Positions 15,869 to 59,721 of a stretch of 64,000 bases of DNA are shown one piece after another. Location: contig CM074511.1 of NCBI GenBank assembly GCA_037379345.1, positions 42,166,862-42,230,861 of the forward strand, written 5' to 3'. Each line of letters opens with the position of its first letter. Positions within the stretch are counted from its first letter, which is position 1. Source of the DNA: Perna viridis (taxonomy: Eukaryota). A program made the translations under genes and the position numbers. The notes beneath the pieces were generated by a model. The model made no database searches and was not told the DNA's origin. It worked only from the letters and a program-made list of their open reading frames with translations.

Positions 15869-18800
15869 TTAGAGTTTAGGTCTCCATCCTTTTTTCATAT
15901 TGTTAATTTTGAGTAAATCGATTAATTCAAGACAAAACGGAGGTTCTTTGAGTTTTTCGTCACTTAAAGAGGACAGAAAACATCCATCCAACCCTTTCTC
16001 TTTACATGTGCGTGCTAGATTGGCAATTTTACAATATTCCAAGCAAACAACAAGTTCATCAACTGTCATATCTTTCAGTGCTTTCTGTTCGGTTTGTAAC
16101 GAGTGAGGATCGGGGAGGGGTCTTGTAGCAGGATTAACAGTGCTCTGTTTAAGTGGCTGTTCTTCCATTTGATCTGGTAAGCGTCGCGCAGTTGGCAGTA
16201 CAGCTACTATTGGCTTTTCTGCTTTCTGCACAGGATCATACATGTTCAGCGAACTTTCGTCAAGTTGCTCGTAGATGCTGCCTTCTTCTTCTTCCTCTCC
16301 AAAAGATTCAGAATCATCTTCTCTGAATGCTTTGACTACTTGTAAAGGCTTATCTCTTGCACCCTTCTTAGATCTCTGGCGGGCAATTTGATTCGGTAAC
16401 TTTCTCACAGAATGCAATAGCTTCTGTAATATGTAAAAATTAAAATTTATTAAGTCAATAATGATATATACTTCAGCTTAATATAATGTTGATCTTCTGA
16501 AGTATTTCATAGTGCGTTTCATCAAGGAATTCAAAATAACTTTGTTTTACCTTAACAAATAATTACTAGTATAATCGGAAACTTTTTATTATGCATGTTA
16601 GATATTTACAGATTGGTCAAAGATATTACCTGGATTTTGGAACCTTTCTCTTTCTGTTCTATGGCTCCAGTGGTATGGGTTCCTGTAAAGTAGTTTATAT
16701 AACTTATGTCGGCCAAATTTCATGCCATGAAAACCTCATCTAGACAAAATGCCAAGGATACGAGCTTTGTTTGCAGCTGGGTATCTTCCTGATAGAAACT
16801 CAACTTATCAGAGAAAAAAAATCATTTATTCCAAACCATGAGATCTTGTAAAAAAACATTTTTTATAACCGATAACCAACAAATGACATTACCAGATGCA
16901 AAAGTTACGGGGGGGGGACAAAAAAGTGCCAACATGTTAATGTTATGTTATTGGCTTCAAAATTCACAAAAAAAAAACAAATTAAAAAAAAAACAAACAA
17001 ACAAAACAAAACAAAACGAAAAAAAATAAACAAAACAATAACAATAAAAACAAATAAATATGCTGATTTTAACATCTTAGTATCTTTTTGAATTTTAGAA
17101 GTTGGTCAGTATAAACAGGTGTCCGGTTTACCTAGGTTGAAAAGGCAACTTGAATTGATGCAAATGCGCTTAAATAAAGTGTCTGGTTTAGACAGGTTAA
17201 CATTGTACTTCAAGACCTCTGGTGGCTGATCCAGGGTGGTGTACCAGTGGTTTTGCTGGAAACCCGTATTTGTTGGATTTTTTTTAACTTTGTGCAAAAC
17301 TTTGGACGAATGAGCAGATAAGTGATTGTAACCCCATTTTAAGAATATTTTGATCCTCCTCTAACCTCCAGTGACTGTAACCCCATTTTAAGAATATTTT
17401 GATCCTCCTCTAACCTCCATTTGCACCCCTGTATATACTTACCTTTCAATTGTGTACTTATATAATCATATTCAGATTCCTCGGTAGATTCCACATCCTC
17501 TTGCACCGAGGTCACTGAAAATACATAAGTAGAATATGTATTTCTTCATGAATAATATATGATAAATTACTTCTATTTGACAGAACAACTAGTTTATGTT
17601 CCAATAGATTAATTATCATACTTTGACTGGAAGAAATGAATGACTATTCATGTGATGCTGAACTAGAAATTTTGACTGTTTTGCACTCAATATATTCAGT
17701 GTTTACACTGCACAAAAACGGACTGGGTTTGTAACGTCATTTCCCATTACTTAAATTATGAATTTTTCGAAAAATGAAATTAGTCTTCCTGAGATCAGAC
17801 ATTGCACATTATCAAGTTAAACAAACAAAAGCCGGAAGATATGCCAATGACGACTTGATTATCGCTCCACTAAATATAAATAATTAAGAAATAAACAGCA
17901 CAAATGTCTTTCACACTCAATAAAATTCTCTGGGAAAAAATCTACAGATAAAGAGTAACACAATTTAATATAAAACACATTGTCAATAAGAGGATATTGG
18001 TGATATCAACCTTGTATTACCCAGGTAAAGCATATAATGAAATATCTTATTTCCAATTAAAGAGCTATCTAAATTGCATTTTTTTTATCAAATTTTATCA
18101 AATACGCATGTGTGAACCAACCGTACAAGGGTGTAGTAGGGAATATCATCGGCGTTTATGCATATTTAACACCAATAGGACCAGAAAGTATACACTGTAG
18201 CCTATGTCAAGCCAAACATCCTAGGAACGTTTTTTTAGCACTAGATGTTCTAACTGGATATGAACTGTAGTTACTGCCCCTGACGTTGAGAAATTCAGAC
18301 AATAATAGCAAACGATTGTGTCGAACATATACTTCGGTTTATTTGAACGTGAAATGAAAAATAATTCATGGTGTATAATGAAAAACAAAAGCCAAGATCA
18401 TCCAAATAACCCATTTTGTCCGAACCACGGGGGCTCTGTTGTTTGTTACTGGCGTTTTCAGCTTTTTTTTTTAAAACTATAAAAGTAAATTAAAAAAAAT
18501 GTTCCAAGTTGATGGAACAATTGATGTCAATTATGACAAAGCCTACCAAATTCTGCAGTGATATTAAAATAGTTCTCTAATATTGATAAAAGATTAAATT
18601 TATGTTCTATTGGATCAAATAATTCACCAGAATTCTTATTTTCTCCAGGTAAGCGGTTCATTTCGTAAAGATCCTCTAGTTTTAGTTCGTCCCATGATGA
18701 TTGATTGATTGTTGGGGTTTAACGCCCGAGCAGCAATATTTCAGCTATATTCAGGCGATGAACATGAAAGGTATGATAAAATGAAATGAAATGATGATAA

Positions 18801-21778
18801 AATGAAAAAAGGGATGGGACAAAAGGATAATAGGGTCGAAAATTTTGATTGCCACTAGAAAAAGGGGGATAGGTAGGGTAGGGCAATTTAGCCGCCTGTG
18901 GCGGAGCCAAAAGGTTCTTACTCCTGTCGAATACTACAGCAGGGGTTCTTTAACGTGCGAGGAACGTGGCATCTTTCCCAACACGGTGCACCACTATGGT
19001 TTACGGTAAGGTTTTCCATGTTATAGCCTGACAACTCCAGCATGTAACAAGCCAGGGGTACCCATTCCACCACCAGGGGCACACATCCCAGTTGCTCTGT
19101 GGGCAGAGCGCATAGCCCCCGGCTAGGTTCCCTGAGCACTATTTAGTTGCCTTTTACGACAAGCTTAGCGCTGCTGCAGGCCTATTCTTTTGACACCCGG
19201 ACCTGCACGGGGCTTAGTTCGTCTCAAATCGATCATCTATTTGATCGATTAGGTATCTCCATGGTAATAAAGTTTAAGATCCAAAATGTTGAAAATATAA
19301 AACGAAAATGGTATTTGAAGCTAAGAAAAAAAGTTTTGATAAAACAAATTAAAATCAAACCAAAACAGTTCACAAAATAGCACTAAGTTAGTTTTGAATT
19401 AAAATTCTCTCACATGGTGCGACACTACAGAGAAATGTCTCTAAATAAGGTAAATAAGGTGTACTATTGATGTGTTTATCTTGTGTTTCTAGGTCCTTAA
19501 ATTTCTACTGTTGATAGTCGTTCATTTTCCCTTTAAACAGACGATACACTTTATAAAGAATTTCAATAGGTCTTGGTAGATCATAACAATAATATATATT
19601 TCACTTCAATCAAATGCTTAACAAAAAGAAACATTGTTATGCTGAGACCAGCGATGGATCTTTTCCCCAATGTCTTAAATTAGAATTTTCAGTCGAGATT
19701 TTTTTTTATGGAGTTCGGCGCTTTAGAATTTTAAAAGACATTGGAAAAAAGATCCATTCCTGACTTGGCATATCAATGTGTCATATTGATATACCGTTAA
19801 AGAAAGATATGAATATAAGTATCGCAATTTGACCAGATTTTAAATTTTCATTTCATTTAAATGATATTATTCAAACAGTTAGTCAACATTCGATCAATCC
19901 TATACCGCTTCCATAGCTTATACGAACGGAGCATCAGCGACGTCCTATATATGTAGAATGTAGGACTAGAACTACGAATGGCCAAAAAATATTCTGACGG
20001 AAGTGACGAAATTGGTCGACACGGAAGTAGTCGATTGCGCAAGTGCTGAGGCGCTGTTTAATACGTCGATGGATACGATTTTATATTTATTTATTTATTT
20101 AATAATAATTTGGAAATTATTGGCTGTGTAGAAATGTTTAAAGTAGCTGTCTTTGTAAGAAGCATGCAAAATCTGAAAAATGTGATACACAACAAAAATA
20201 CTACATATTTTTATTTTTGTAATCAAGTTGTCTTGTGGGTCTATATTGTGAAATGCGTATTTATTCATTCCAATCTATCTGCTCTTGGGAGATAATCAAT
20301 ATTGAAAATCCAATAGATTCTATTGTATTTGAGTTATCTCCCTTAATTTTGAAATCTATAGTGCATTCTACAGGATTTTTAACTCCTAAGAACACGGGTT
20401 ATACGAAAAAGCGAATGTTAATAATAAATATTAATATCAATAATAAAAATATGTATGCTTTTCAGCCATGAATCGCATTTTGCATGATTCTTAGCTGGAG
20501 TGCTTCTCAAGCTTTCCCAGAAGAAAGTCTCACGCATTCTCCTTATTGAATGAGACTTCGCCCATATCTACATGCCGGCGCACCGTAAACAAAGAATGAG
20601 CGCCGTCCATCATAAGCCTAAAATCATTTTAAATTTTGGGAAATATTTTGTTACTGAAAATCTGCAATATCAAGGAGGTATGATAGGTGGTCTCAATATT
20701 TGATTAACGCCTCACTCAATTTCTAGGTGGTATCGGATGTGATTAACTAGGTGTTATGGGATGTGCTTTATTTTAAATTTTATATTAAAAGATTCGATAG
20801 AAATGACGCGCACTTACAACGCCTTGGTGGTATAGGAGGTGGCTTGTCATCATCTAATTCATCATCTTCAATATTCAGGTACAACATGTTTGTAGCTTTG
20901 GGTATGGCCTCTGTTTCTAATGTATTTACAACGGTGTTGCTGTTAATTTTTTTTGAAAAATTGTTTTTGACAAACATTGCATATCCAGTGCTCGCCATAT
21001 CGATAGCTGTGAAGACTTCCAGTTCTTGAATTATTTCTCTGTTAGTCGGTAGCATTCTGAAATGTCGTCTCAGCGTTTCTCCTTCCCTTAACACTACTGA
21101 GTCTGGTTTGTGATGACAAACAATGTAGTCCTGACTAATCAATTCTACTAGCTTAACCTTGCTATCTCCAAGATGTTCTGAAAAAGGGCTTATGCCAGCC
21201 TTTTCTATGAATATCACATACTGTGGAAATTGAAAGCGGTCAACCATTTCTGTTATTGTATACATATTTTCATCATTTTCCACTGCGAATTTGTACATTT
21301 TCTTTTCAGACAGTACAACTAATTCGTTTGTATTTTTTCTCTTACACACCAACCCCTTACCTTCAATGTATCTGTCAAATTCCAAAATATCGCCGTCCTT
21401 AACAATTTTTTCGGAAATATGCTCAGTTTTTTCCGACATAAATTTCATTTTACTTAAGATATAACGTGGACATGTCGTAACAATATCTCGAACAAAACTC
21501 AGAGTTTTTTTGTCGTCATCTTCGTTCGAAATTTTCATTCGACCTTTGTGAACTAGCGGTATCAATAGCTCTTCTTTTCCAGCGAATGCTCGAACGCTCT
21601 GAATACATTGCACAAAATCCAACTTTACTAGATCACCGATAGAAAACGATTCATCTTCGTTCTCTCCAAGCCACCCTTCAGCAACTTTAACGACAATTGG
21701 TAACTTGTTGTCTCGTATGACATCCTTTAAGAAACCAGATTTACTAGACCATTGAATTGGTGCATTCTCTGCCGCCAT
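15869..21778 (-). CDS. GAREM/Themis-family CABIT-SAM adaptor, paralogue A (~546 aa)
   Basis: Exons 21778-20818 (CABIT: QWSS..L..LPIVVKV, LLIPLVHKG, GDILE, GLVCKR, YTITEMVDRFQFPQYV; ends PPPIPPRR), 17514-17443 (EESEYDYI), 16682-16630, 16423-15869 (SAM, ends KGWRPKL). Phases 1,1,0 join in frame, total 1641 nt. The GWRPK[IL] end matches the GAREM1 C-terminus as I recall it. Confidence 0.88.
17322..17419. repeat. 49-bp tandem duplication
   Basis: gtgattgtaaccccattttaagaatattttgatcctcctctaacctcca twice, one mismatch. Confidence 0.92.
18697..19213. mobile_element. SINE-like/RTE-tail composite repeat
   Basis: GC-rich island with a (ttga)n end, a ggggttctttaacgtgc core, and an RTE-like 3' end gttgccttttacgacaagc...acccggacctgcacgggg. 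Confidence 0.5.
19632..19780. repeat. Imperfect ~45-bp inverted repeat
   Basis: cattgttatgc...atggatcttttccccaatgtctt versus aagacattggaaaaaagatccat...gcatatcaatg. Confidence 0.65.
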
Positions 21779-22686
21779 TAGGGAACCGGATTCTAAAATA
21801 GGAAGCTTGTTACCTACAAAGCAAGTTTGTAGATTTTAGACTTCCTGGTTTAGTGTAATAGTATGTTATGCGCACTCACATTTGGGTGTACATTTAACCA
21901 TTTAAGAAGTAATAATTGCTGTTAGTTACGTGTCACATACATGTGCTAGTAGCATTTGTTACTGCGAATGAAACAGTTAACGTCAGGGAACAGGGTTGGT
22001 TGTTGGTCTATCCTTGATTGAATGACCATGACCTGATGAAATGTCTTCGGTAGTTGACTGGACAGTTAATAATTGACTTTCTATCACTTCATAGGTATTT
22101 TCATGTAAGTTTAATAGAAAGTTTACAAAAAATATCCACGAAATTTACTAGCTGTAATGCAAATGCAAATAAGTGGAAAACATGTTTATAAAGGGCAGCA
22201 GAATAAATGAATAATTGTCATAATTTTGTCAATATTTAAGTTTAATTTTGATTGGAATCATAAATTTTGCAATTAAACATTGTCTGTGAAAATAACAATT
22301 ATCAGCTGCCGACAATAGAAATGAACATAACTCTATGGTGACAGTTAGCATGGATAATAAATTGATTAATATAAGAATGGCCCTGACCTACGAACGACAA
22401 CGACCACCACCTGTGAGCATTTAGTGAATTCCGTTCATCCTATTAACTCATTAAAAATACTGCACGAGAAGCGAAATTACTGAACATTGCATATGGTATT
22501 TTACATCTCCGATGTTACTCCGAGATTAAAATCGCAACTTAAAAATAAAGGACTTCAGCAGTCTTACTTCTTTACCCGTTTGACATTAGCAACTTCGCGC
22601 ATGAATCTAGAAAGCAAGGAAACGTCTCGTTTCACATTGTCCATGTTTACAGTCTGGTGGAATCAGTGTTGCTGTAGCATTTTTGA

Positions 22687-27371: not shown

Positions 27372-30300
27372 TTATTCAATTCGTGGACGCCACCCTTCCT
27401 TCATCTTATTGAATTTTGCAATTTCAATCAGATTTAAGCTGAAAGGTTCTTTACTAAGATCATCCTCGTCTATGTCAGCAATGAACTCTCCATCCATTTT
27501 ATGTTCGTCACACAAGTCGGCGAGTTTTGTCAAAGCACATTGATGAAGGCAACTGACAAGTTCCTTGACAGACATTTGAGATATATGCGGCTCTCGTTGT
27601 GAGTGCGAGCTGCGTGTACTGGGTCGAATCTTACCTATCGGTCGGATTTGCGTATTTATCGGTGGGTATGGCAACATTTTTGAGAAATCTGGGATATCAT
27701 AAACATCTGAACTATCATTTTCGCAATCTTCTTGATTAAATGCCATGTTTTTCTCTTCTCCTGGCGATGACATAAGGGACATTGTATATGATAGGCGACT
27801 AAAAGTTTTAGCATTGTAGATCCTTGAACTGTTATCTTTTGATTGGTAATCGAATATTTGTTCTTTCGGTGATCTTAAAGTAGGTGATGTTAGCGGTTTT
27901 GTCTTGTAATCGGAACAAACAGCATTCGGAGATAATGGCTGTTTAGATCTTGGAGGAACACATATTGGTGCAGTACCACATTTCTTCTTTTCGAAGTCTG
28001 TTTGATATAAAATATGACTAAAATATACCTAGACAATGTACTAGTTAATGGTAAAACATTATTTTTAAATGTTACTTATTGAGCGCTGATACTTCTTGTG
28101 ATCAACAGTAAATAGTTGCATCATTTTCGAAAAGTAAAAATGAATAACTGTACAGCAGGAATGATTTTTACGCATGTCATTGGTGACAGCGTTAACAGCG
28201 AAATGAAAAAGAAAATATTTCAAAATATAACTAAATAGTGAATAAATAAAATATATAAATATAACGTTTATTGTTTGATTTGCCCTTACACCAAATATTC
28301 CGAAACATTAAGGGATACCACGTGTATTTCAAGTCATACAACAAACTTACATTCGATAGGTTCATATTCATGATCTAACTCCTCACTGATACTATTTTTA
28401 GATCTGGGAGGACATTGAGGTGGTTTGTCGTCTTCCGAAAGTCCTGGCAAACAATTAGAAAATATATATATTTTTAGGTATTTTCCTTTTATCATTTTAT
28501 GTGATAGGTTACCATAAAGATACAAGATAAGCATCTTAAACTTCTGAAAAAAATGAATCAACTCAAAATCTCTGATTACTAGAACAAGTTAATATTATTA
28601 AAACTTTTAGATATACACGATATGCTGAATCATAATAAATTTATTTATGGGAGAGTTATCAAGCGAATCAATATTCTAGCGGAAATCCAAAAAATGCAAT
28701 CCAGGGACAAAGATCAGACAGGGAAAACAAACACACAAAAAAAAAACCAAAAAAAAAAAAAAAACCGAAACAATACGTACAAAGATACAGAAGTAAATGA
28801 GCCTCGAACTCCACTAAAAATATTGGAGCATGGTCCAGATGCAACGAAGGGTAAGCGTCATATATTTGCATATTGCATATAGAGCAAACATTTTTTAGAC
28901 CAAAATAGAGGAAATGAGTGATTAGAAAATACTAGGAGTATTGATGACATTGGTAGTTTCAAGAAAACTCATGATCAAATGCTTGTTTCTTTTTCCTAAA
29001 AAAAAACAAAAACAAAAACAAAACAAAAAATACAAAAAACATTTAATTTTATTTCCATTTGAAATTCATGTTTTAAAACTTGTATATTGATTTCAAAAGT
29101 ATTACCAAGGCTGTGGCAATGACAGTCTAATTAAAATAAGACCTTGCGTTATTTTTGTTCGCACAAATAGAAATCAGAGGGGCAAACTTGAATTATACTG
29201 TAGCGTGAAGAAATCTTAAGTCCATATAATGCACTTAAATAAAGTGTACCTAGTTCAGCATTCCGTTCTCTTGAGAGTTGAAAAATGTATTCGAGAAATG
29301 TACTTAATAGGTCTAGGTTATGCTTAAAAATGATCGAAAGTAACCTTGAACATCTAAATAGAGGAAATCATAAGGCCTAAAATTGGCTCGTATGACAGAA
29401 AAAAACAAAAACAAAATAAACCAGATCAATTGATTTTTGAAGTTCCCATTAAACGCCGGATGAACAAAAGAACGGAAACAGGAAGATATTGTTTTTTAAA
29501 TTTATTATTAATCATCCTTTTGAATTCAAATATGAGTATATATGTATGGTTTCCCCATGAATTCATTAAAATTGTTATAATTATTTACTCATGTAATTCC
29601 GAGGCACTTCGGCTGAAATGCCAGTGTGTCCACTACCTTGACCCTTGGCAAAATAGTTCCTCATTACCACAACTTTACCTTTAGTTAATACAATTATGCA
29701 TAACTTTTACCTTAATTTAATTATTTATTACCACGACTTACTTTCTCTTGACTAAAATTCACTATTTACGTGACTTTACTTTGGTATAATACTAAACCTT
29801 ACTGTGACCTGTATGTAAATAAAGGCTCAGTCATTTGTATAGGAAATAAGGTGAGGACTTCAAAAAACACTGAGTAACATTGAGTTATTTCTGATTGTAT
29901 TTGAATTCATATATAATGATAATAGATATGGTGAATACGTCAAAGAGACAACAACCCCAACAGGCTTAGAGGCCACCCATGGGTATCAGTGAAAGACGAG
30001 GAAATTCTAACACCACAGGGCAGCTGACCTCAAAACAACAATATATACAGGTACATCGAAATAGTTGCCCCTCTATGCTCCTGCAAAATAAAAGTAAATT
30101 GAAATTGAAAACGAAACAAGACAAAGAGGTAAGAAATTCCTGACTCGGGACAGACGCATAAAAATGCGGTCGGATTCAAGTACTTTTGACGTGATCAAAA
30201 CTCTACCCTTTTATATCTGGCCACTGTGAAAAAAATATAGTCTCTCTTATGACACTGCTTTTGATAGTAATAGTAGTCAGTGGTGATGTTATCCGTGGGT

Positions 30301-33300
30301 TGGTTAAATACAGTGTTCTAGAAAAGCAGAGGACGCTTACCCTGCCGGTGCACCTGGTCCATGCTCCCAGTTTTCAGTGGAGTCCGAGTTGCTCATTTAC
30401 TTTTGTTGACTTGTACGTATTATTTTTGTTATTTTAAGCTTTTCGTTATGTGTGTCTTTTTGCCTGTCTCGTCTTTGTCCTTGGATTGCATTATTTTGAT
30501 TTCCGCTAGAATCTTGGTTCCCTTGATTGCTCTTTGATTTCCGCTAGAATCTTAGTTCCTTTGATTACTCTTTCGTTCGTTCTTGTTAATTAAGGAAGGA
30601 GATGAATTTTATAAAATAGGAATTTTATTATTTTTAATTCGCTGCAGAAAATCAGTGATTGTTTCACATAAACAAATACTTTAAACATTATTTCCTGCTC
30701 ACAATCTTGCTTCAACATCCTCATTAGTAGCAAGGGATAACTTTGTATACACGATAGCACATTTGTTGTAATGTTTTGTGTATGCTTTAAAATGTATGCC
30801 TATCGGAAAACTTTGCGTTAATGTCACATCTTAGAGTTGTTGAAATGTCACATTTCAGAGTCGCGGTAAAATCATCATTAATATCATTATCTTACATTAA
30901 GATATTCATCCAGTTTTGCTCCTTCTATGTGTATTGCATAGTAGAATAGCTGATTTGCCAGTTTTTGGTTATTAGTCATAATCAACGATTTTTTGTTGTT
31001 GTTGAAGCGGTCAAAGGGAAGTAACTCTGTAGTTGGACAAACATTTTTGGACAATTAAAAGCATTGTAGTAATGTTTAGTTTCTTTTCTCACTTTCTTTC
31101 TAGAACATACACATAATTAAGAATAATGAATACGCTGATTTTTCTTCCATGTTTTAATAATTTACCATTACTTATGTGTCCCATATTTTCATTGTAAACC
31201 GTGTGGCACCATATTGTTGAATTATATATACGACATCTCAGTTCTCTCTGGTAAAGTCTTGTTACCACTGGGCACCATACTTATAGTAGTAGTTATTTTA
31301 CAAGTTGCAAGTAAAGTGCAGTGACGTAGAATTTGCTTTGGAAAGTTTGATTGAAAAATATTACAAATAATCTAAATTTGTTTATTAGCATATTAAATTT
31401 TCATATATTTTTTTATAACAAATTATTTGATTTCTTGGGAAATATCGAGATTTCAGTGCTCTTCTAGAACGGAAGGCTGGTGACACGAATTTCCGTGACG
31501 GCCCAATAAAGGAAAGGATTCTGGCACAATTTACCTGTGTCAGTGTTTCGTACAAGATTTTTCAATAGATATTTCATTCGTTTATACTTGTATTTGAGTA
31601 CACTGACAAGCATTTAATTATACTTTAATACATGTAACATTTAACTTCACAAATATCTGCCACAGGTTCATCACATGAGAATAAAAACCATTTCTGACTG
31701 TTTACTATACTGTGAAAGTACTTTCATTCGTGTATACCAATTTTAGTGGTTAAGGGAAGAAACACTAGTTCGTGTATTCTTGATATCGTGGCTTTGAAGT
31801 TTTCAGTATACACATCAATTGGATCCTCCTTTTCATTAAGAACCATATTCGTGGTTTTGCCTACAAACGAAAACAACAAAAAATGGTACCCCACGTACAA
31901 TAGTACTCTCACAGTAACTTTCATATATAATTCGCATACAACTTGCGCAATGTATTTTTATCGTTTTAATCGTTTGATGTACTATGAAATATACTGTCAA
32001 CACCAGACTCGCCCCCTATCAATATGGTACCATAGTTCTCGTGTGATACACTTTTGAATTCAGGAAAATATCGCATTTTGTTGAAGTTATTTAAAAATTA
32101 TTGTTGCTTAGTTATTGTTAATTTATATCTGCATACCCTTGGACGACTTTGGAACGAAGTTTAAATACAATAAGTTATTATACTTATTTAAATCAATTAA
32201 GGCAAGACTCTAATAGAGCAACACAATAGACCGAAAGGCGTTACAGGATCACAAATAGAAATACTGCTAGTAAAACCTTAACCGCTCCAATTTAGCGGCC
32301 GTTGGTTTTGGTGTTACGCATAAGGTTACTCTAAGATAGAGGAGTAGTGTAGGGAGTTCAGAAACACTACACGGAGGAGCCTACTACAATATTTTCTCTT
32401 ATACTATTTTGCTAAAGCTGATTAAACAATTGTCCCAAATGCTGAAAAAAGTTACCAATGGATAACTTTCTAAAAACAATATTTTTTTTTAGAAATCTAA
32501 AAAAATAACGATTAAACTTTCTTGACTCTTGTAATAAAAATGAAATCAATGAAACCAGTTTTTCCTACTCTTATAATTGCTATACTCAGATTGGTTTTAT
32601 AAAACACAAAATGATGACTAATAACCACAAATTGGTTATTACATACCTCCGAGATCATGAAAATTTCTTACCGCTAATTGAAGGCACACAACATGCCTTT
32701 TGCTGTTTTTCAGTTTGGTAGATTCGTTGTCTCTTTGACACATTCTCCATTTCTTCCCAATGTCGATCTTTGACAGAGATTTCAATACGTGTTATGAATA
32801 ATCAAAATTACTTACTCCTTGGTGGCCGAGGTGGTATTTTAGGAGGGTCCTCAGAGGGCGTCATCTCATTGTCGTCATCTATTTCTATCTTTTTAATTTT
32901 GTGAAAACTTCTTGGTTTTCTCGACAGCTCTAAGTACAAACTGCCTTCTACAATATCCATGGTGGGAGTTTTCTGAGAAAAATTTCGGACAGCCAATAGT
33001 TCATATTCCTTTTGGTCAGAATTAATAGGGACATGTACTTCGATATCATTGACGTCTTTTCTGCCAAGAGGTAATAGTACAATACCTCTTTCAACATACT
33101 TTTCAGTTTCAATTCGCATTTTTTCCAAGGCTTGATCATGCTGTTGCGTGTGGTGGCCTACCACTACATCTTCTGTGAATACTCTTGTCAATTTTACGCA
33201 CCCAGAAAAAGCTTGAATATTGTCTATAGCACCTTCTAAATCTGTTGTAAGAACCTTTTCAAACTCATCCTCTACGAATCCTACACATTGTGGTAAAGGT

Positions 33301-33875
33301 AGGCTATCTACAATTTCTTTTAAAGTGTAATGTGTCCCATCTGGCAGTGGAACAAATCGACCTGTTACATCCTTACTTATGATAATACTGCCACCTTCAT
33401 ACTTAGCGACTAACCCTTGAGTGGGCAGATACTTTAAAAGTTTTAAACGTTTCCCCACTTTGACTTGTATTGTTTTATCACGGCTCGATTTTGCAACAAA
33501 TTCAGATTCAACTCGTACGTACCGAGGAAAATCTCTAAGAAGTTCTGGCACCGAGCAATATGGTCTTGAATTTGGTCTAATAATCAACACTTTACCTTGA
33601 TATCCAAGTGGTATTATTATTTCGTTTGGTTGCGTGTATCCGGTCCAATCTTCATGAACAGAGGTGTTCAATGAAGAAATTACTATCGCATTGACTTTCT
33701 GAACACTTTTCACACATTCCAACACGAGAAAATCACCTGCTGAAATAGATTCGGATTCGGTGTTACCTAAGTATCCTTCAGACAACTGAACTTTAACAGG
33801 TAAAGGTCCCTTAGCAACTTCACTCAAGGTCTTGGTTTCTCTTGACCCATCAGTATTTCGGTCCTTAAAAGCCAT
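27372..33875 (-). CDS. GAREM/Themis-family CABIT-SAM adaptor, paralogue B (~592-633 aa)
   Basis: Exons 33875-32816 (CABIT: LPVKVQL, IIIPLGYQGKV, SVPELLRDFPRYV, YTLKEIVDSLPLPQCV; ends PPKIPPRPPR), optional 31860-31738, 28443-28351 (KPPQCPPR...HEYEPIE), 27997-27372 (SAM, ends EGWRPRIE). All junctions are phase 1 and in frame. Confidence 0.88.
28655..28862 (-). mobile_element. Degraded Penelope-like 3' tail
   Basis: atccagggacaaagatcagaca...ggagcatggtccagatgc...gggtaagcgtc matches the tail at 13030-13195. Confidence 0.7.
30315..30575 (+). mobile_element. Solo Penelope-like 3' tail with 38-bp terminal tandem duplication
   Basis: gcttaccctgccggtgcacctggtccatgctcccag...gagttgctcatt; tttgatttccgctagaatcttggttcccttgatt repeated twice. 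Confidence 0.8.
31738..31860 (-). CDS. Candidate 123-nt symmetric internal exon of paralogue B
   Basis: Strong acceptor (ttgttttcgtttgtag), open frame KTTNMVLNEKEDPIDVYTENF...TTKI, phase 1-1, weak donor gtatac. Confidence 0.45.
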
Positions 33876-44100: not shown

Positions 44101-44339
44101 TCTTACACTAATAAACGAACTTAAATCAGTTAAAAAACGCCAGAATCCCTTGTTAAAACAGTTTCAACTGTTTATACGTGATACAAGAAAAGGACTACTA
44201 GCAATTAAATGACATGCCAGCTCCAGACCAGTTTAAACCCCCCCCCCCCCCAAAAAAAAAAAAACCCTCACCGTACGTAATATCAATCCCAATTCTTCCA
44301 ATGCGGGTGTTGAATCACGGTACATCTTCAATCCATACA

Positions 44340-44497
44340 TAGGAGCTCATTTACTGATGTTACTTTGTATGTATTATTTTTGTCACATCATGTTCTTTGT
44401 TGTGTTTCTCTGTTTTCCATTCCTGGTCTTTGTCTTTGGATTACATTCTTTTGATTTCCGCTAGAATCTTGGTTGCCTTGCAATTGATTACTCTTTT
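44340..44497 (+). mobile_element. Penelope-like 3' tail fragment inverted to the copy at 42296-44100
   Basis: gctcatttac...tgttctttgttgtgt...ggattacattcttttgatttccgctagaatcttggtt. Confidence 0.7.
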
Positions 44498-52300: not shown

Positions 52301-53598
52301 TTACTAAAAGCCGTGGATTAAAGCTACATTTAGAGAAGAAATCATTAAATTCCAATGAAAAATTAAAATTCGGCCCCTTTGACCCGTAATTACTCGGAAA
52401 TCATAAGAGCTATCAAAAATCTAATTAAAAACCAAGGCAGAGATTTTATTGAGGAACATAATGTTTTTTTTCAAATTCAAACCAGAAATAAAAAAAAAAT
52501 ATGTATATTACATTCCTCAGACTTACATGGTTATTCTGTTATTATTCCGAGACCTATATTGACCAATCAGTAAAGATGAAGCATAAAATCAATCTTTATA
52601 TTCAATCTTTGTTTATGCAAACACGAACCGAAATTGGCAAACCGTGCTCTTCTAGTTCACAATATTTTCTAAGTATTGCAGATTTATGCAACCAATGCTG
52701 AAAATTCTGTCAAACGAGGATTTTTACTTAGTAACAATGTCGTCAATGGTAAATGCGAAGGAAAACGCACGACAAGCGCAATAATACCTCTGTATAGTAA
52801 AGCCTAAAATATGTATCATCTAACATAACATAACTTAACAAAACCTATCAGAACGTATCAACTTCGTACTCAAATGCATTCACACCTTTCGACTACTGTT
52901 TTATTAGGCATTAATACGCTTTTAGTACGCATTGATACATTGGCGATACCCTTTTCTAAGTTTTAGTGCGTTTAAATTTTCGTACCGTTTGTTTTGTGCA
53001 GACCAATACAAACCGGACTGGTCACGTATCAATCTACGTGTAGCTACGTATGTAGCCGTTTTAAGTACGCGTTGATTCCATTTGATATATATATTACCGT
53101 TTCACTATGTTTATATGAAAACGTAGTTAAACGGGATAGCCAAAACGTGACAGTGTGAGCTTTAATCTAGTACAGGTCTTTAAATCACACACCTATTGTC
53201 GGTGACATTGATTTTTGAGGGTTTTTAGGGTATATGAAAGGTCCATACTTACCCAAATACATTATATCTCCACATCTATGCAGTTTTTATCAACAACTAA
53301 ACGCCTCTTCCATATAAAACTCATTTAAAGCAATGAGTTATGTAATTTGTTGGAAATAAACGCATGCGACAGACTAATTTCATGAAATGTAGTTTTTCGG
53401 AGAACAACTGGGGGATAAAAAATGCTCTGTATGGTTACGAACTAGTCTATATTTTATAACATAAAGATATAAGTAGTATCATCTAGAGATATGCTATAGT
53501 CATTATGATACATACATGAATATTCTGCACTGGCATAATAACGCGTAAAAATATCGAAATATCATTTACATACCTTTCTTCTTTCCACCGGTCGCCAT
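46317..53598 (-). pseudogene. Transposon-borne SAM-like/ubiquitin-like/HECT E3 ligase (G2E3-like HECT), frameshifted
   Basis: Exon 1 53598-53574 (MATGGKKK), exon 2 49730-49633 (EIISFLKSRGYTDGQIKVL), exon 3 48138-46317 (IDQRILQTIPDGSLKEFIPLAGDR; GG.TRK...FFPEGKS...LRFYLAT; HECT: E.AEDSGGVLRDLLSEFW, FIRFCAGSD, RRPIAHTCGCILKL). Broken across several frames. Confidence 0.85.
48340..49280. mobile_element. Helentron-associated (HINE-like) repeats in an intron of the E3 gene
   Basis: Repeated ggagttgcgcttacaagaaatgtggacagacagac...ctatatacccccc...tttgctgggg units with (gaca)n. Confidence 0.5.
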
Positions 53599-55002
53599 TG
53601 CTTAGTTTTCCGGAAATCTCGCGACAGTCCTGCGCGTGATTAATTCGTAATATCAAAATATTATGTAATAATTTCGACTTAGCTATGTCGTAATTTCGAC
53701 TTAACTATATCGTAATTTCGACATAGTATGTCATAATTTCGACTTAGCTATATCGTAATTTCGACTTAGCTATGTCGTTATTTCGACATATTATGTCGTA
53801 ATTTCGACACATTCCGTACCTTACGGCCTTTTAACTGATAGTAGATCTGTTGATGTACTAACGAATCCAAACAGAAGTATGTGTGTATTACGTAAATATA
53901 TGTCTTCTTGTTATTCATAATTATGGTATTTGCTTAAACTACTTCCTGATTGGACTATTCAAACAGATATCTCAAGTGTAATCGTAGTGAAGTAAAACCT
54001 TTAATGACATACAAGTTGTCAAGATTTTTAAAAATCTAAACACGGTGCATGTTGAATTTGTTAGCTGATTAATCATTTACTTAAAAAATCTCAGTGAGAA
54101 TTGAAACACCAAGCTTCAGACACTGTGATTAAAGGTGCAGTACGAGTTCGAGTCCCGCGGAGGAAACGACAAAATATTTGTTGCAAATATAACAGTTCTA
54201 ACATGCTTACATTTTCTTCCCTGTATCAATTTGACCCGATGGAGCAGTGTAGTGAATAGAGTCGTCACAGTCTGAGACATTTTTTTCGTATATTGTGACT
54301 ATCAATAAATGTGTATCAGCATTTTTCATTTTTTAAAAATAAGCTGGCTTGTTTGATCTATAAATGTTTATTTTTTTTGCCTTGTGATATTGACACATCA
54401 TGTTTATATAAAAATAGCAATAATGAATACTTTAAATATTTATTAACATAACAAATAAAAAAAACGTAATATTTATAAAGAAAACAGTAAATAATCTATT
54501 GGTTACAGTAAAATATGCGACAGTGATCTATGACAATAAATGCAGAATAAAGTCGACACTATCGACACTACGTAAGAATTCTAAAAAAAAACGTGTGTAA
54601 CCCTCAATACCTATTGTGGTAATGACTTGTTTGATAGAATGACATCTACAAAGGCAAATGAATGCCTAAAGTACTTGATAATACTACAATAAAACCACTG
54701 TAAAACAATCACAAAAAAAAACCTAATGTAATTTTAAGAAAATATTTCGAACAATAACTATGCCAAACCAGAATCAAATGCAATGCTTATTGAAGAAATA
54801 GATTTGTGCATACTAAATTCGATAGAGACAAACAGTGCTATATATATTGGTCAATTTGGATAAGTAGCAGTATTAAAAAATCAACTTTGTGTGTAAAAAG
54901 AAAACTATATCTTAAATATATTATATCATAATCACATTTAACAATCAACAGAAAACAAAATTGAATTAAAACAAAAGCCATGATAATTCAGCATTTATCC
55001 TT

Positions 55003-55560: not shown

Positions 55561-58500
55561 TTATTCGATTCTCGGGCGCCACCCCGTCTTCATCTTTTTC
55601 AGTTTTGCAATCTCGATCAAGTTGAGATTAAACGGTTCTTTGTTCAGATCGCCTTCGTCTAAATCTGCTATGAATTGTCCATCCATTTTATGTTCATTAC
55701 ACAAGACTGCGAGTTTTGATAGAGCACATTGCTGAAGACAACTAACTAGTTCTTTAACTGACATCTGAGATAACCGCGACTCCTGTGTCGAAGGAATAGG
55801 ACGGGTACTTGGCTGCACTTTACCAACGGGCCGGTCTTGTTTGCCTTCCGGGATTTGGGGCAACATTTTTGACACATCGGGATAATCATAATCTTCCATA
55901 TCGTCTTCACCTTCTTCGCTTATGATTGGATTGGTTTTCACAACAATCTTTGGTGCTGACGGCATTGCTTTTGCGTTTGCCTTTGGTTTCTGCTTAGGAC
56001 GAGGCGGATGGTTAACAGTTTTATTTTTTGTGTCACAATAAGGGTTACCTATTGGCGAATCATACGCTGTTCGATCTGGTGGTAGTCTAGCTGTTGGAGA
56101 TGGTGGAGGTTTAAACTTTTCTTTTGGTTCTGAAGTACTAGGAGATAATGGAGGATTAAATCTTGTGGGAATAGACGGTGGGGCCAGTTGATCTACCGGT
56201 GACTTTGAAACAGGAGAAACAGGAAGTGGTTGCGAGACTGCCAAAGGCATTTGTGGTTCAGTTTTATTTGTTGGTGTCTTCGACTTGAACTTTGATACCA
56301 GTTCCGAATGTACTCGCTTCAATTTCTTGTAAAAAGGCTGAAAGAACGATAAATATTTATTTCATATCGAACTTTAGACATTTAAGAACTTAACGTTTAA
56401 TTCCCATTATACCACTGTAAGAAGTTTCTATATACATGTAATACAATTAAATGGAATCACCATTTACTGATGGACCTCTTTGGGTAGTTACCTGTTTATC
56501 ATTTTAATTGACATAGAAATTCAAATCCCCTTGCCAATTTTCAGTCTAAAGAGGTTCACTAGGTAAGGGTTCTTTAATGAAGGTAAGACCAAGTTGAGTA
56601 TATTACTCGCTGTAAAACAGAGGACGCATTACCTCTAATCGTATCATAAATGATTATGTTGACCCAACCGGTGCATCTGTTCCGTGTTCAAAGTTTTTCT
56701 TGGAGCCTAAGTTGCTCATTTACTTTTGTTGCTTTGTGCCAAATATTTTGATTATTGTATGTTCTTTGGTGTATGTGTCTATTTTCCCTGTCTGGTCTTT
56801 GTCCCAGGATTACATTTTAATATTTCCGCTAGAATCGTGGTCCTCTTCATTACTCTTTGACAAGAATTACACACACAATGCATTGTACACACAAAATACA
56901 TACCACTGGTACTACAATCTTTTGTGCTTTCTGTGGCAAAGCAATATAATCATCATGGATGTTGTCTGGAATAAGAAACATATATAAATATCGAACGACA
57001 TACCAGAACATATATTTAAAGTAAATGGTACTCGATGGGTTTTTATTATTATTATTTACAGGAATTTTGAGTTGCATAATGTTTGTCATCTTTAATTTTC
57101 CTTCAATTCAATTCAAAATGTTTATCTTTGTTTATAAATGAAATTCTGGGTTTGAATTCATAGGATAAATTTGGTTGTTTTAACACATTAGTAAAACTGA
57201 AACTTTTACAGGATCAAAACTATTGTATTCGCAAGCTGTTGGAGAATCAGAACTTTATTTACTTAATTCATAAATAAACCTTAAATTATTCTAATTTACC
57301 CGGGACTTCATAGATAAGCAACGGTCCATCAAACGTTTCTTTGGCATCACTTGTCTTTGTTTCTTCCACTTTTAAACGAAATTTTAAATATTAACTTATG
57401 CAAGAAAAAAAAAGAGGTGAAATAAAATGATCAAGATGACATACTTTATAAAATGTTTACAATAAATAGAAGTTAAGTTATTTTTCTTTCTAAATTATCA
57501 GATACATCTTAAATATTATTAATTATATGATATCACATGCAATTACTGATTATTTTTAATCATGCGAATATGTTTCCCTGTGGATATTTCAAGAAAAGAC
57601 ATGAATTATCAAAACGTTCAAAAAGTTTAGCTTCAATAGTTTTGTAAACTTAGGGACTTATAGGTGTGGTAGAGTCAACGTCTATGTAAGACCAATGTAA
57701 ATAGCAGTATTAAATAAAACCACACAAAAAAAAAAAAAAAAAAAAGTGAGTGTAAAAAGAGTGATCAAGGGAATCAATGAACAACAATGACAAATGTATC
57801 AGTGTGTATCAATGTGTATGCTGATAGTTAGTTTGGCAACGGCAAAATAGAACTAATAATAAATAGTACCATTAATATTATAAAAAAAGAATGATTTAAA
57901 TGACATAAGCTACCGTGAACTTAACAAAAATTAGAAAATTTAAAGGTTGTTGACATTGTAAAGAGTGAAAATGTATGAAATTATGAAATACATGTAATAT
58001 GATAAAAGCATGACAACAGAAAATAAAAGATGGTGGTTACATTAGTAGAATTTTTATCAGATTTGATATAAGTGAAATTTTGACGAGTGAAGCGAAGTGT
58101 ATCATGACCACGGCAACTTAAAGCATACTTGTAGTAACTGCAAGTGATTGCAATCGCCATGAGCGCGGTTCATTATTAGCAGACAAAGAGCGAGAAGCAT
58201 ATTGCAGTTGTTTTTATTTTGGTAAAGTATAATATCAAAAACAAAGGAGGCGAAATTATCACTTAAAACAGGAGTGACAAGGAATTTAAAAAAAGGAAAA
58301 ATAAAACAACAACAAATAGTAAAATGGAGAAAAAAAAGAATTTCACCCGTGACAGTCTAATTTGCATTGATCATTTTCACTACAATTGAATGCATATCAG
58401 ATTCCGACTTATCCTTTGACTTATAAAAACTAAAATAAATAAATTTAGTGATTTATTTCCCTTGTAATTATTTGATGATAACTTCATACTTTGTTTTTGA

Positions 58501-59721
58501 GCAGGCGTTACGGGATGTGGTTTCACAGCTGCATTTTGGTAGTGTTTCTTCCTATTCTTGACATGCTTTTTAGGCTCCATCGGTTTTGCTAAAAAGATAG
58601 CAACCCCAGAGGGTTTGTTAGATAACTTTGGTCATGATTTGTTATCCTAAACATGTTTTTACCCTTTTGTATTAATCATGGATAGTCGGTATACGTGCAG
58701 CATGCTTACCATACACTTCCGCGAAGAAAATTATTTTGTTCTACCGAAGCCCTACACAGCGGTAGTGTGTACTGAGCATTCTAATGGACTTAAATGCAAA
58801 TAATCTATAAATGATATAACTGTATATTTACTTAACTGTTATATTACCAATATATCATTTTTGACTACAAGTGATTAAATGTTGGACTGATACCAAGCAA
58901 GAATTCAAACAGACTACACCTGTCCTTTACTTTAAATAGTAGAACATCAACTAACTACACTTCAATTATGCCTGGCTCTAAAAGGGCAAACAACATCCAA
59001 GAAAATAAACAAATATTAGATAAGAATGATGACCGATGATACTATATAGAGTGTTCTGAAGTAAATGAATAAAAAAAAATGCCGACCGCCAAAATTCAAA
59101 TATATTCTTGATATTTAAACCCAAAATTACACATAATTAGCACACGTACTATTGATAATTTCCTTAGTGTCTTCATTTTAACAGATCAACTGATCTGTAC
59201 ATAAACAAATGATTTTTTCAATAACACTTGAAGTTTGACTGGTTGATTGTGTGTAGTTTAATGCAATATGTTGTATATTTCATGGATTTCAGGATGAGAA
59301 CTTCTGCCCAGTCTAATAGACCCCGTTTTGTACTAGTCCGACACGCTTGTTTAGATCTTTGGATCTTTATTGTGCTATATAACAGAAGCAACGGCCAGCA
59401 GTTAGGCATATTACCCTACCAAGCATGTACTTAGAGCTAGTAAGTGGTCACTGTTTTAACTAAACATCGCGTGCATGGCGGAAAGCATTGGCTACCAATT
59501 CTAAAGTCTTTTGTCTGACTCGGCCATGATCAAACCCATGACCTCGAGATAAGCAGTTTACCATAGCTCACATTCCATCAGTTTGAAGAAGGTGTATGAA
59601 AATAACCAATGGTTAAAAAAATACTGACGTTCATCAACAGGTTCATAGTCCTCATCTGCTTCACTAATAGTAACTACAGGTCTGTGTGGACGTTTTGGAC
59701 GTTCTGGTGGCTTTTCATCTT
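55561..59721 (-). CDS. CABIT-SAM family paralogue C, 3' part (CABIT exon presumably beyond 64000)
   Basis: Exons 59721-59629 (93 nt, same size and phase as the paralogue B exon; KPPERPKRP...DEDYEPV), 58588-~58490 (KHYQN), 57368-57300 (frame uncertain), 56337-55561 (Pro-rich, EDYDYPD, SAM ending TGWRPRIE). The SAM differs from paralogue B at 12 of 69 positions. Confidence 0.82.
56618..56858 (+). mobile_element. Degraded Penelope-like 3' tail in the last intron of paralogue C
   Basis: ccggtgcatctg...agttgctcatttacttttgttgc...gtctttgtcccaggattacatt. Confidence 0.7.

What the first reader, a model, noticed from the sequence alone, without database searches (positions are those of the whole stretch)
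15869..59721. Tandem array of diversified GAREM/Themis-like CABIT-SAM adaptors: candidate invertebrate phosphotyrosine (immune) signalling family
Seen: three same-strand genes with a shared plan (one large CABIT exon in A and B, small linker exons, terminal SAM exon ending GWRP[KR][LI]). The CABIT domains of A and B are very divergent, the linkers vary freely, and the SAM domains of B and C are about 83% identical. Known: vertebrate GAREM1/2 and Themis are low-copy Grb2/SHP-phosphatase adaptors, and Themis acts in T-cell selection. Inference: a birth-and-death cluster of these adaptors in an animal without lymphocytes may be a lineage-specific signalling module, with SAM-mediated hetero-oligomers combining different CABIT and tyrosine-motif sets. 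I know of no description of such a cluster but cannot exclude one.
Basis: partly seen in the sequence, partly recalled or inferred. Interest (0 to 1): 0.85.

Follow-up and report, generated by a model that had tools for sequence, protein, structure and literature searches.

The report
Tandem GAREM-like CABIT-SAM adaptor genes
Three neighbouring genes in a bivalve-like mollusc genome encode signalling adaptor proteins built like vertebrate GAREM; they are real, and one is shown to be spliced and transcribed, but they belong to a widespread uncharacterised animal family and nothing links them to immunity.

Summary
Three minus-strand genes sit in tandem.

- **Gene A (15869-21778):** 546 aa. RNA-derived contigs from four studies join its CABIT exon, two small exons and its terminal exon through GT..AG introns.
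- **Gene B (27372-33875):** 592 aa, predicted in silico only.
- **Gene C (55561 to about 67570):** 646 aa, predicted in silico only. Its CABIT exon lies about 2.5 kb beyond the window.

**Domains.** Pfam CABIT scores are above cut-off in all three. The C-terminal domain is a SAM: a family profile matches the human LOC64762 SAM structure 2dkz (GAREM1, from my memory) at E 4e-16, and a five-helix AlphaFold model finds only SAM domains. Each CABIT exon ends in phase 1 just after a Sos1-like PxxPxR motif. Acidic tyrosine motifs follow.

**History.** B and C are a lineage-specific duplicate pair under purifying selection (dN/dS about 0.2, dS saturated), and B evolves faster. A is an older paralogue whose nearest relative is a Mytilus gene.

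**How common.** CABIT-SAM proteins ending in GWRP occur across molluscs, cnidarians, echinoderms and amphioxus, all annotated "uncharacterized". A separate locus at 59.5 Mb carries a SAM exon far closer to the human one, so A-C are paralogues of GAREM, not its orthologue.

**Not supported.** The immune role and SAM hetero-oligomers have no evidence. This is a new member of a known kind, of modest interest.

The parts
20818..21778 (-). Gene A, coding part of the CABIT exon (ATG at 21778, donor after 20818, phase 1)
   Evidence: Pfam CABIT E 5.5e-12. RNA-derived contigs of 4 runs cover 21790-20818 and splice to 17514. The CABIT signature Cys is present, in the motif GLVCK.
20819..20842 (-). Gene A proline-rich motif PPPIPPRR (PxxPxR class) at the end of the CABIT exon
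   Evidence: Read from the translation. It resembles the Sos1 peptide VPPPVPPRRR, which binds the Grb2 N-terminal SH3 domain (PMC13381594). Binding was not tested.
17443..17514 (-). Gene A exon 2 (72 nt), an acidic exon holding the tyrosine motif SEYDYI
   Evidence: Spliced in contigs of all 4 runs, with GT..AG introns on the minus strand. Homologous exons were found in B and C.
16630..16682 (-). Gene A exon 3 (53 nt)
   Evidence: Joints 16681/17442 (cut +1) and 16423/16630 appear in all 4 runs. The reading frame is kept.
15869..16423 (-). Gene A terminal exon, coding part: linker with SIYEQL and MYDPV, the SAM domain (about 15872-16072), and the tail GWRPKL plus a TAA stop. The 3' UTR runs on for about 600 nt below 15800.
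   Evidence: Contigs cover 16423-15800 and run on beyond. SAM identity comes from the family profile against 2dkz at E 4.4e-16. The spliced ORF is 546 aa.
32816..33875 (-). Gene B, coding part of the CABIT exon (ATG at 33875, GTAAGT donor after 32816, phase 1). It ends in PPKIPPRPPR (32817-32846).
   Evidence: Pfam CABIT E 9e-15. Donor phase is the same as in A and C. The AlphaFold model has pLDDT 80, is mostly beta, and residues 103-178 are SH3-like at Z 5-7. Ala replaces the signature Cys at 33405-33407.
28351..28443 (-). Gene B exon 2 (93 nt, predicted), an acidic exon with the tyrosine motif HEYEPI
   Evidence: Found by open frame, a CAG acceptor, a GTAAGT donor and the motif shared with A and C. 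It completes an intact 592-aa ORF. No RNA evidence was obtained.
27372..27997 (-). Gene B terminal exon (predicted start 27997): linker with VYDIP, the SAM domain (about 27375-27575), and the tail GWRPRIE plus stop
   Evidence: The acceptor CAAACAG is in phase 1, which matches exon 2. The AlphaFold model of the last 83 aa has pLDDT 86.9 and five helices. All top Foldseek hits are SAM domains, including 2dkz at TM 0.65.
59639..59721 (-). Gene C exon 2 (predicted, 83 nt, weak donor GTTGAT), an acidic exon with the tyrosine motif EDYEPV. C's CABIT exon lies upstream, outside the window, at L010:2491-3570(-), which is window-equivalent 66491-67570.
   Evidence: This is the only donor and acceptor pair that gives an intact 646-aa ORF. 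The C CABIT exon scores 65.6 bits in Pfam and is 62% identical to B's. No RNA evidence was obtained.
55561..56337 (-). Gene C terminal exon (predicted start 56337 or 56325): a long Pro/Lys-rich linker, DYDYP, the SAM domain (about 55564-55764), and the tail GWRPRIE plus stop
   Evidence: The open frame and phase-0 CAG acceptor are. The SAM core is 82% identical to B's, with dN 0.09.

Best explanation
The locus holds three tandem, same-strand paralogous genes. They encode cytoplasmic adaptor proteins with the GAREM architecture. Each has one N-terminal CABIT domain of about 320-360 aa, encoded by a single exon. A PxxPxR proline-rich motif follows at the exon end, then a disordered acidic and proline-rich linker with conserved tyrosine motifs, then a C-terminal SAM domain ending in a GWRP tail.

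Shown: domain identities, gene order, splicing and transcription of gene A, purifying selection on B and C, and the duplication order (A split off first, B and C later).

Inferred by analogy with GAREM and Themis: the proteins act as phosphotyrosine-signalling scaffolds. The proline-rich motif would recruit the SH3 domains of a Grb2/Drk-type adaptor. The tyrosine motifs, once phosphorylated, would recruit SH2 proteins such as an SHP-type phosphatase. Those of A fit the ITIM-like S-x-Y-x-x-[IL] pattern, as does GAREM1 Y453. The CABIT and SAM domains would supply further protein contacts or self-association.

A-C belong to a divergent invertebrate branch of the CABIT-SAM family. They are not the orthologue of vertebrate GAREM, which this genome appears to keep at another locus.
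For: - CABIT: Pfam hits are above cut-off for A, B and C. A 54-sequence family profile matches THEMIS structures at E about 1e-20. The B model is mostly beta with an SH3-like subdomain, as published for CABIT (bioRxiv 10.1101/2024.10.01.616165).
- SAM: the same profile matches 2dkz at E 4.4e-16 and SARM1/TIR-1 SAM domains at about 1e-5. SAM_1 or SAM_2 is found in 12-14 of 54 family members. The model is a five-helix bundle at pLDDT 86.9, and its Foldseek hits are all SAM domains.
- Transcription: one contig of about 2.3 kb in each of 4 runs from 4 studies joins A's four coding exons through GT..AG introns, giving an in-frame 546-aa ORF.
- Shared gene plan: the CABIT-exon donor is in phase 1 directly after the PxxPxR motif in all three genes, and all three have a homologous acidic-tyrosine exon 2.
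- Selection: B versus C gives dN/dS 0.20 for CABIT and dN 0.09 for the SAM core.
- GAREM's reported features: CABIT, a proline-rich Grb2-binding region, the Y453 LPYEEL ITIM-like site, and SAM (PMC8086153). Grb2 SH3N prefers PxxPxR (PMC13381594).
Against: - No binding, phosphorylation or localisation data exist for any member of this branch.
- B and C lack the CABIT signature cysteine. The published structure suggests that residue is only a buried core residue.
- B and C lack a clear YxN (Grb2 SH2) or ITIM-like motif. Their tyrosines are YEP[IV] and YD[IY]P.
- The B and C gene models have no RNA support.
- C's exon 2 donor is weak.
- The runs laid on gene A are only guessed to be RNA. The guess rests on the intron-less contigs.
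Confidence: 0.72

Rival explanations
1. The array is a lineage-specific immune signalling module. The paralogues would form SAM-mediated hetero-oligomers that combine different CABIT and tyrosine-motif sets, working downstream of haemocyte receptors.
For: - Themis-family CABIT proteins do tune immune-receptor signalling in vertebrates (PMC13381594).
- The family is diversified in molluscs. A 59-row clade of 50%-identity representatives holds every mollusc-named row and no row named from another phylum, and the Atlas clusters are mostly Mollusca.
- B and C are lineage-specific duplicates.
- Tyrosine motifs differ between paralogues.
- Many SAM domains oligomerise (established knowledge).
Against: - No expression or infection data could be obtained.
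- GAREM, the architecture actually shared, is a growth-factor and neuronal adaptor, not an immune one.
- dN/dS of about 0.2 shows conservation rather than an arms-race signature.
- The SAM-SAM complex job gave no answer, which is evidence neither for nor against.
- The same architecture is present in cnidarians and deuterostomes.
Confidence: 0.1
2. One or both of the younger copies, especially the fast-evolving B, is a decaying or functionally released duplicate that no longer works as an adaptor.
For: - B's branch is about five times longer than C's since their split (0.56 against 0.11).
- B is only 51-54% identical to the nearest relatives, against 65-70% for C.
- B and C lack the CABIT cysteine.
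- No spliced B or C product was met in the protein collections.
- C's exon 2 donor is weak.
Against: - Both have intact ORFs across all predicted exons, and B has canonical splice sites.
- dN/dS is 0.2 over CABIT and the SAM core is highly conserved.
- The Cys-to-Ala change is shared with eight relatives (P0003-P0010) from other samples, of unknown species. It is therefore old and tolerated.
Confidence: 0.1
3. The genes are simply this species' GAREM orthologues, recently triplicated.
For: They have the same domain order as GAREM and the same GWRP-type tail as other CABIT-SAM proteins.
Against: - A SAM exon at G000:C1:59527365-59527592 matches the human 2dkz SAM at E 2.5e-16 as a single sequence. 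A three-sequence profile of A-C reaches only E 0.059.
- A and B/C fall within a clade of pteriomorph bivalve sequences, inside a larger clade that holds every mollusc-named sequence. The amphioxus and echinoderm members lie outside it.
- A and B are only 25-30% identical.
Confidence: 0.04

Closest known systems
Vertebrate GAREM1/GAREM2 (FAM59A/B), Grb2-associated regulators of Erk/MAPK
   Same: One N-terminal CABIT domain of about 340 aa, a proline-rich SH3-binding region, tyrosine motifs in a disordered middle, and a C-terminal SAM (PMC8086153; bioRxiv 2024.10.01.616165). The family SAM profile matches the human LOC64762 SAM structure 2dkz at E 4.4e-16. That LOC64762 is GAREM1 rests on my own knowledge.
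   Different: - A-C are paralogues. A different locus at 59.5 Mb carries a SAM exon much closer to the human one.
- They are shorter, at 546-646 aa against about 875 aa.
- B and C lack the CABIT cysteine.
- Only A has ITIM-like motifs and a YxN motif.
- There are three tandem copies plus a fourth at 52.79 Mb, against two dispersed genes in mammals.
- No functional data exist.
Themis/Themis2 (tandem-CABIT regulators of antigen-receptor signalling)
   Same: They share the CABIT domain (the profile matches THEMIS chains 9iaz, 9uou and 9i3p at E about 1e-20). A proline-rich sequence follows directly after CABIT, and in Themis that sequence binds a Grb2 SH3 domain.
   Different: - Themis has two CABIT domains and no SAM.
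- Its proline-rich sequence is of the PxRPxK type, for Grb2 SH3C. Here the motif is PxxPxR, as in Sos1, for SH3N.
- Themis is restricted to lymphoid cells of vertebrates.
Uncharacterised invertebrate CABIT-SAM proteins in public annotation. Examples: Mytilus trossulus XP_063403177, Pinctada imbricata KAK3090436, Crassostrea virginica XP_022315692, Argopecten irradians XP_069127084-90, Dendronephthya, Acropora, Patiria, Branchiostoma.
   Same: Same architecture and GW[RK]P-type tail. A groups with the Mytilus protein at 99% SH-aLRT. Argopecten appears to have two adjacent family genes, judged from consecutive accessions on one contig (an inference).
   Different: None of these has been studied. 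The three-gene array with a 16-kb mobile-element insertion between B and C is specific to this genome as far as could be seen. Synteny in other species was not tested.

Membership tests
GAREM-like CABIT-SAM adaptor family | Single N-terminal CABIT domain | tested here: met
   Pfam PF12736 scores: A 46 bits, B 55 bits, C 65.6 bits, against a cut-off of 24. The family profile matches THEMIS chains at E about 1e-20. There is one CABIT exon per gene.
GAREM-like CABIT-SAM adaptor family | C-terminal SAM domain | tested here: met
   The single sequences are only borderline (E 0.13). The family profile matches 2dkz at E 4.4e-16. The AlphaFold five-helix model has pLDDT 86.9. All top Foldseek hits are SAM domains.
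GAREM-like CABIT-SAM adaptor family | Proline-rich SH3 (Grb2)-binding region after CABIT | tested here: inconclusive
   The motifs PPPIPPRR, PPKIPPRPPR and PPPVPPRPPR sit at the end of each CABIT exon. They fit the PxxPxR preference of Grb2 SH3N. Binding itself cannot be tested with these tools.
GAREM-like CABIT-SAM adaptor family | Phosphorylatable tyrosines that recruit Grb2 SH2 (YxN) and Shp2 (ITIM-like) | tested here: inconclusive
   A has YLNI, SEYDYI and SIYEQL. B and C have HEYEPI or EDYEPV and VYDIP or DYDYP. Only A fits the consensus patterns. Phosphorylation cannot be tested here.
GAREM-like CABIT-SAM adaptor family | Orthology to vertebrate GAREM1/2 | tested here: not met
   Another locus (C1:59.527 Mb) has a SAM exon matching human 2dkz at E 2.5e-16 as a single sequence. 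A three-sequence A-C profile reaches only E 0.059. A-C lie within the clade that holds all mollusc-named sequences.
Themis family | Two tandem CABIT domains, no SAM | tested here: not met
   Each gene has one CABIT exon and a SAM exon.
CABIT domain (Pfam PF12736) | Signature conserved cysteine in the SH3-like subdomain | tested here: not met
   Met in A (GLVCK). Not met in B, C and their nearest relatives, which have GL[VI]AK. Of 31 aligned family members, 25 have the Cys. The published structure places this Cys in a hydrophobic core.

The most novel reading that the evidence does not exclude
Molluscs kept a true GAREM and, beside it, diversified a separate CABIT-SAM branch by repeated local duplication: this array, a fourth gene at 52.79 Mb, and adjacent pairs in scallop. 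The paralogues would carry different tyrosine and SH3-binding codes and could assemble through their SAM domains into mixed scaffolds. That would be a combinatorial SHP/Grb2 adaptor system serving lineage-specific, possibly immune or non-self, receptor signalling in animals without lymphocytes.
Probability: 0.1. Interest if true: 0.6.

Novelty: new member of a known kind. Interest (0 to 1): 0.3.

Why it matters
CABIT proteins are studied almost only through Themis and GAREM in mammals, and how the CABIT domain works is still debated. This locus shows three things:

- The GAREM architecture (CABIT, PxxPxR, tyrosine motifs, SAM with a GWRP tail) is ancient and widespread in invertebrates.
- It has a distinct, uncharacterised branch that duplicates locally in bivalves.
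- Natural variants exist that lack the name-giving cysteine yet stay under purifying selection.

That gives comparative material for finding out which CABIT and SAM features matter. As a genome feature, however, it is an ordinary tandem gene family. Any immune meaning is speculation until expression and binding are measured.

Tried and rejected
- **Single-sequence SAM detection.** Pfam on the 83-aa tails gave only SAM_1 at E 0.13 for B. phmmer against PDB gave only the SMSr SAM at E 0.14. A family profile was needed.
- **Two mis-framed references** were rejected by the tools and corrected.
- **Linker exons by homology.** Neither blastn nor short-peptide comparison of the B and C introns found them. 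The only hits were shared repeats. A motif-plus-splice-site scan then found exon 2 in each gene. No exon-3 equivalent exists in B.
- **The search for homologous proteins** with the B terminal exon found only the window's own products and one relative. With the 31-row full-length alignment it returned only Mytilus proteins, because the search is word-limited. No vertebrate GAREM sequence could be brought in for the tree.
- **The look-up of encoding contigs** for P0001 returned unspliced genomic contigs of gene B. For P0004 it returned a 21-kb stretch from a relative with one CABIT gene, too short to test synteny.
- **Complex prediction** of B-SAM with C-SAM: no answer, score 0.00. This is evidence neither for nor against binding.
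- **Fold searches with the B CABIT model.** Foldseek against PDB gave no meaningful match. VIA-align wide found only SH3-like folds for residues 103-178. No Themis chain was among the rows shown from either fold library.
- **CABIT exon for the 59.5-Mb GAREM-type SAM exon.** tblastn found none within 21 kb upstream.
- **Literature.** No paper in the library holds both CABIT and Crassostrea. The one paper that holds both CABIT and 'mollusc' is unrelated, a review on leprosy diagnosis. No bivalve paper listed mentions GAREM. The Johnson 2009 family paper is not held. LOC64762 could not be tied to GAREM1 from the library.
- **Joined models.** The joined spliced models of A, B and C were never sent to a search, fold or look-up tool. 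They were assembled only inside scripts to check reading frames. All searches used single exons by reference.
Full report
**Where and what**

The window is G000:C1:42166862-42230861 of a 723-Mb, 46-contig genome with about 33% G+C. All named relatives of these genes are molluscs, and the nearest are pteriomorph bivalves. Run identities are coded, so I do not name the species. The three genes lie on the minus strand.

**Checking the observation**

- The large ORFs at 20780-21778 (A) and 32808-33911 (B) hit Pfam CABIT at E 5.5e-12 and 9e-15, above the curated cut-off.
- The ORFs at 15869-16417, 27372-27782 and 55561-56322 share a C-terminal block of about 70 aa ending GWRPKL or GWRPRIE.
- The A and B CABIT exons are 25-30% identical.
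- The B and C SAM cores are 82% identical over 67 aa.
- A six-frame search of the whole genome found the third CABIT exon just outside the window, at C1:42233349-42234431(-), which is L010:2482-3675. It is 62% identical to B's.
- Gene C therefore runs from 55561 to about 67570 in window-equivalent coordinates.

**Is the C-terminal domain a SAM?**

The three sequences alone are only borderline. I collected full-length relatives with a profile of the three CABIT exons. That search found 268 representatives at E <= 1e-3. Many are 520-850 aa, with an N-terminal CABIT and a C-terminus ending GW[RK]P or NWVP. I aligned 51 of them with the three tails (A4).

- The profile matches THEMIS chains at about 1e-20 through its CABIT part.
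- Through positions 537-604 it matches 2dkz, 'SAM_PNT domain of hypothetical protein LOC64762', at E 4.4e-16. It then matches SARM1/TIR-1, SAMHD1, BICC1 and Shank SAM domains.
- From my own knowledge, LOC64762 is human GAREM1 (FAM59A). I could not confirm this from the library.
- Pfam finds SAM_1 or SAM_2 in 12-14 of the 54 members and CABIT in 50.
- AlphaFold2 on B's last 83 aa gives a five-helix bundle at pLDDT 86.9. All its best Foldseek matches are SAM domains: Scm, BAR, 2dkz at TM 0.65, PHC3 and SARM1.
- The B CABIT exon folds into a mostly beta structure at pLDDT 80. Residues 103-178 are SH3-like at Z 5-7. This fits the published CABIT2 structure, which has an inserted SH3-like subdomain.

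**Are the exons joined?**

- Runs holding about 30% of the sampled words of 15800-21790 come from at least six studies.
- In four of these runs, from four studies, a single contig of about 2.3 kb covers 21790-20818, 17514-17442, 16681-16630 and 16423-15800.
- The three skipped stretches all end CT..AC on the plus strand, which is GT..AG on the minus strand.
- The spliced ORF is in frame and 546 aa long.
- The runs are only guessed to be RNA. Intron-less contigs with canonical splice ends are hard to explain otherwise.

For B and C the reads tool was exhausted, so I modelled them.

- All three CABIT exons have a donor in phase 1 directly after the proline-rich motif.
- Each gene has a homologous small acidic exon with a tyrosine motif: SEYDYI in A, HEYEPI in B, EDYEPV in C.
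- B closes to an intact 592-aa ORF with GTAAGT donors and CAG acceptors: 33875-32816, 28443-28351 and 27997-27372.
- C closes to 646 aa only with the weak donor at 59639 and the acceptor at 56337.
- These joined models were used only to check frames inside scripts. No search, fold or look-up was run on a joined sequence.

**History**

A quick maximum-likelihood tree of 82 CABIT regions gives the following.

- B and C group together (99). Their sister group is eight unnamed relatives, P0003-P0010 (100 for the joint clade).
- A groups with Mytilus trossulus XP_063403177 (99).
- All of these lie within a pteriomorph bivalve clade (96), alongside Pinctada, Crassostrea and scallop proteins.
- Heteroconch and palaeoheterodont bivalves (Dreissena, Mactra, Sinanodonta) form their own clade, as do gastropods (Haliotis, Patella).
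- Cnidarian, echinoderm and amphioxus CABIT-SAM proteins lie outside.

The A versus B/C split is therefore old, and the B/C duplication is specific to this lineage. It is still not recent: dS is about 1.3, which is saturated. dN/dS is 0.20 over CABIT, and dN is 0.09 in the SAM core. B evolves about five times faster than C.

The CABIT signature cysteine is kept in A and in 25 of 31 family members. It is Ala in B, in C and in their nearest relatives.

**The rest of the genome**

- A fourth CABIT-plus-SAM gene lies at C1:52.7938-52.7956 Mb.
- Five further CABIT exons, at 51.70, 62.25 and 69.83 Mb, form a separate deep clade. A sixth, at 69.76 Mb (L006), sits on a very long branch and is not placed with them.
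- A large exon at C1:59.527 Mb ends in a SAM that matches human 2dkz at E 2.5e-16 as a single sequence. This is far closer than A-C, so it is probably the true GAREM orthologue. Its CABIT exon was not found within 21 kb upstream.
- A-C are therefore GAREM-like paralogues, not GAREM itself.

**How it most likely works**

By analogy only. GAREM is tyrosine-phosphorylated after EGF stimulation. It binds Grb2 through a proline-rich region and has an ITIM-like Shp-binding site, LPYEEL (PMC8086153). In Themis, CABIT plus a proline-rich sequence clasp a Grb2 SH3 domain. Grb2 SH3N prefers PxxPxR, as in the Sos1 peptide VPPPVPPRRR (PMC13381594).

The motifs here (PPPIPPRR, PPKIPPRPPR, PPPVPPRPPR) are of that class, and they sit exactly at the CABIT boundary. 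A's SEYDYI and SIYEQL fit S-x-Y-x-x-[IL]. B and C carry YEP[IV] and YD[IY]P instead.

I therefore read the proteins as Grb2/SH2-recruiting scaffolds with paralogue-specific tyrosine codes. I give about 0.9 to the architecture and about 0.5 to the binding mechanism.

The immune role and SAM hetero-oligomers remain untested. The one complex prediction gave no answer.

**Novelty**

- I found no paper in the held library describing invertebrate CABIT-SAM genes or such a cluster.
- The proteins are nonetheless widely present in public annotations as 'uncharacterized' or 'CABIT domain-containing'. They also form ESM-Atlas clusters, mostly from Mollusca and Cnidaria.
- Argopecten seems to have two adjacent family genes as well.
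- This is a new member of a known kind. It is real, tidy and modestly interesting.

**Surroundings**

- A stretch of about 16 kb, 37883-53818, was noted by another reader as a mobile element (s1-771670). It separates B from C and carries integrase-core and weak HECT hits.
- An RPA2-like exon lies upstream at 3454-3729 (+). That reading is mine, from memory.

Noticed in passing
L018:1351-1710 (+), which is G000:C1:42155159-42155518, about 11.3 kb left of the window start: A 119-aa ORF that starts with Met and encodes a SAM-like domain of the same type (profile E 1e-8; 24% identical to A's terminal exon). It has an HIYDEM tyrosine motif but no GWRP tail, and no CABIT exon was detected nearby. 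It could be a SAM-only relative or a truncated inverted relic of the array.
   Followed up: partly
G000:C1:59527365-59527592 (+), in L027: Terminal part of an open frame of at least 575 aa (738 aa by the genome search). Its SAM matches the human LOC64762 (GAREM1) SAM structure 2dkz at E 2.5e-16 and ends GWRPKKK, so it is probably the genome's true GAREM orthologue. No CABIT exon was found within 21 kb upstream.
   Followed up: partly
G000:C1:52793796-52795615 (-), in L026 and L031: A fourth compact CABIT-plus-SAM gene of the same family (SAM exon 96 bits, tail GWKPK) on the same chromosome, 10.5 Mb away. It sits on a long branch in the tree.
   Followed up: partly
G000:C14, at 27.6-28.9 Mb, 13.76 Mb, 14.25-14.27 Mb and 1.13 Mb (L028, L029, L032-L035, L037, L038, L042, L043): At least ten exons with a GAREM-type SAM (family profile positions about 450-610, E 1e-7 to 1e-16) but no CABIT match nearby. 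Several are clustered, and two are identical copies 9.5 kb apart. The gene family they belong to is unknown.
   Followed up: no
G000:C1 at 51.697 Mb (L001), 62.25 Mb (L007, L008, L040, L041) and 69.76-69.84 Mb (L004, L006, L009): Six further CABIT exons, all on the same chromosome as the array. Five of them (L001, L004, L007, L008, L009) form a separate deep clade; L006 does not fall in it and sits on a very long branch. The copies at 62.25 and 69.8 Mb are themselves local clusters. No SAM was detected beside them.
   Followed up: no
window 13269-14345 (-), window 42410-42817 (-), L010:5535-6134 (+): A repeated ORF with a reverse-transcriptase-like motif (F-R-Y-I-D-D-V-L), present in at least three copies around the array. 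It gives no Pfam hit at E <= 0.01. A small ORF (MSNS[AV]G[VF]S[RK]KA...) sits beside two of the three copies (12925-13227; L010:6175-6459), and a third copy of that small ORF lies at 61427-61729, away from any of them.
   Followed up: no
window 18600-19400 and 20000-20600 (inside gene A's large intron): Summed contig depth in the RNA-like runs reaches 10^3-10^4 here, against about 30-125 on A's exons. There are many loose ends and odd joints. These are highly expressed or highly repeated elements.
   Followed up: no
window 15870: T>C on the plus strand in three of four runs changes gene A's stop codon from TAA to TGA, which is still a stop. Further differences at 16144, 20902, 20945 and 21424 are shared by the same three runs, so this is allelic variation.
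   Followed up: no
window 37883-53818: The stretch between B and C was noted by another reader as a DNA transposon. The ORF at 39321-39767 hits the integrase core domain rva_4 (E 5e-10), and the ORF at 46317-46844 weakly hits HECT (E 0.0014, below cut-off).
   Followed up: partly
window 3454-3729 (+): An ORF with an RPA2/RPA32-like OB-fold stretch (the motif [10 protein letters not shown]). The identification is from memory only.
   Followed up: no
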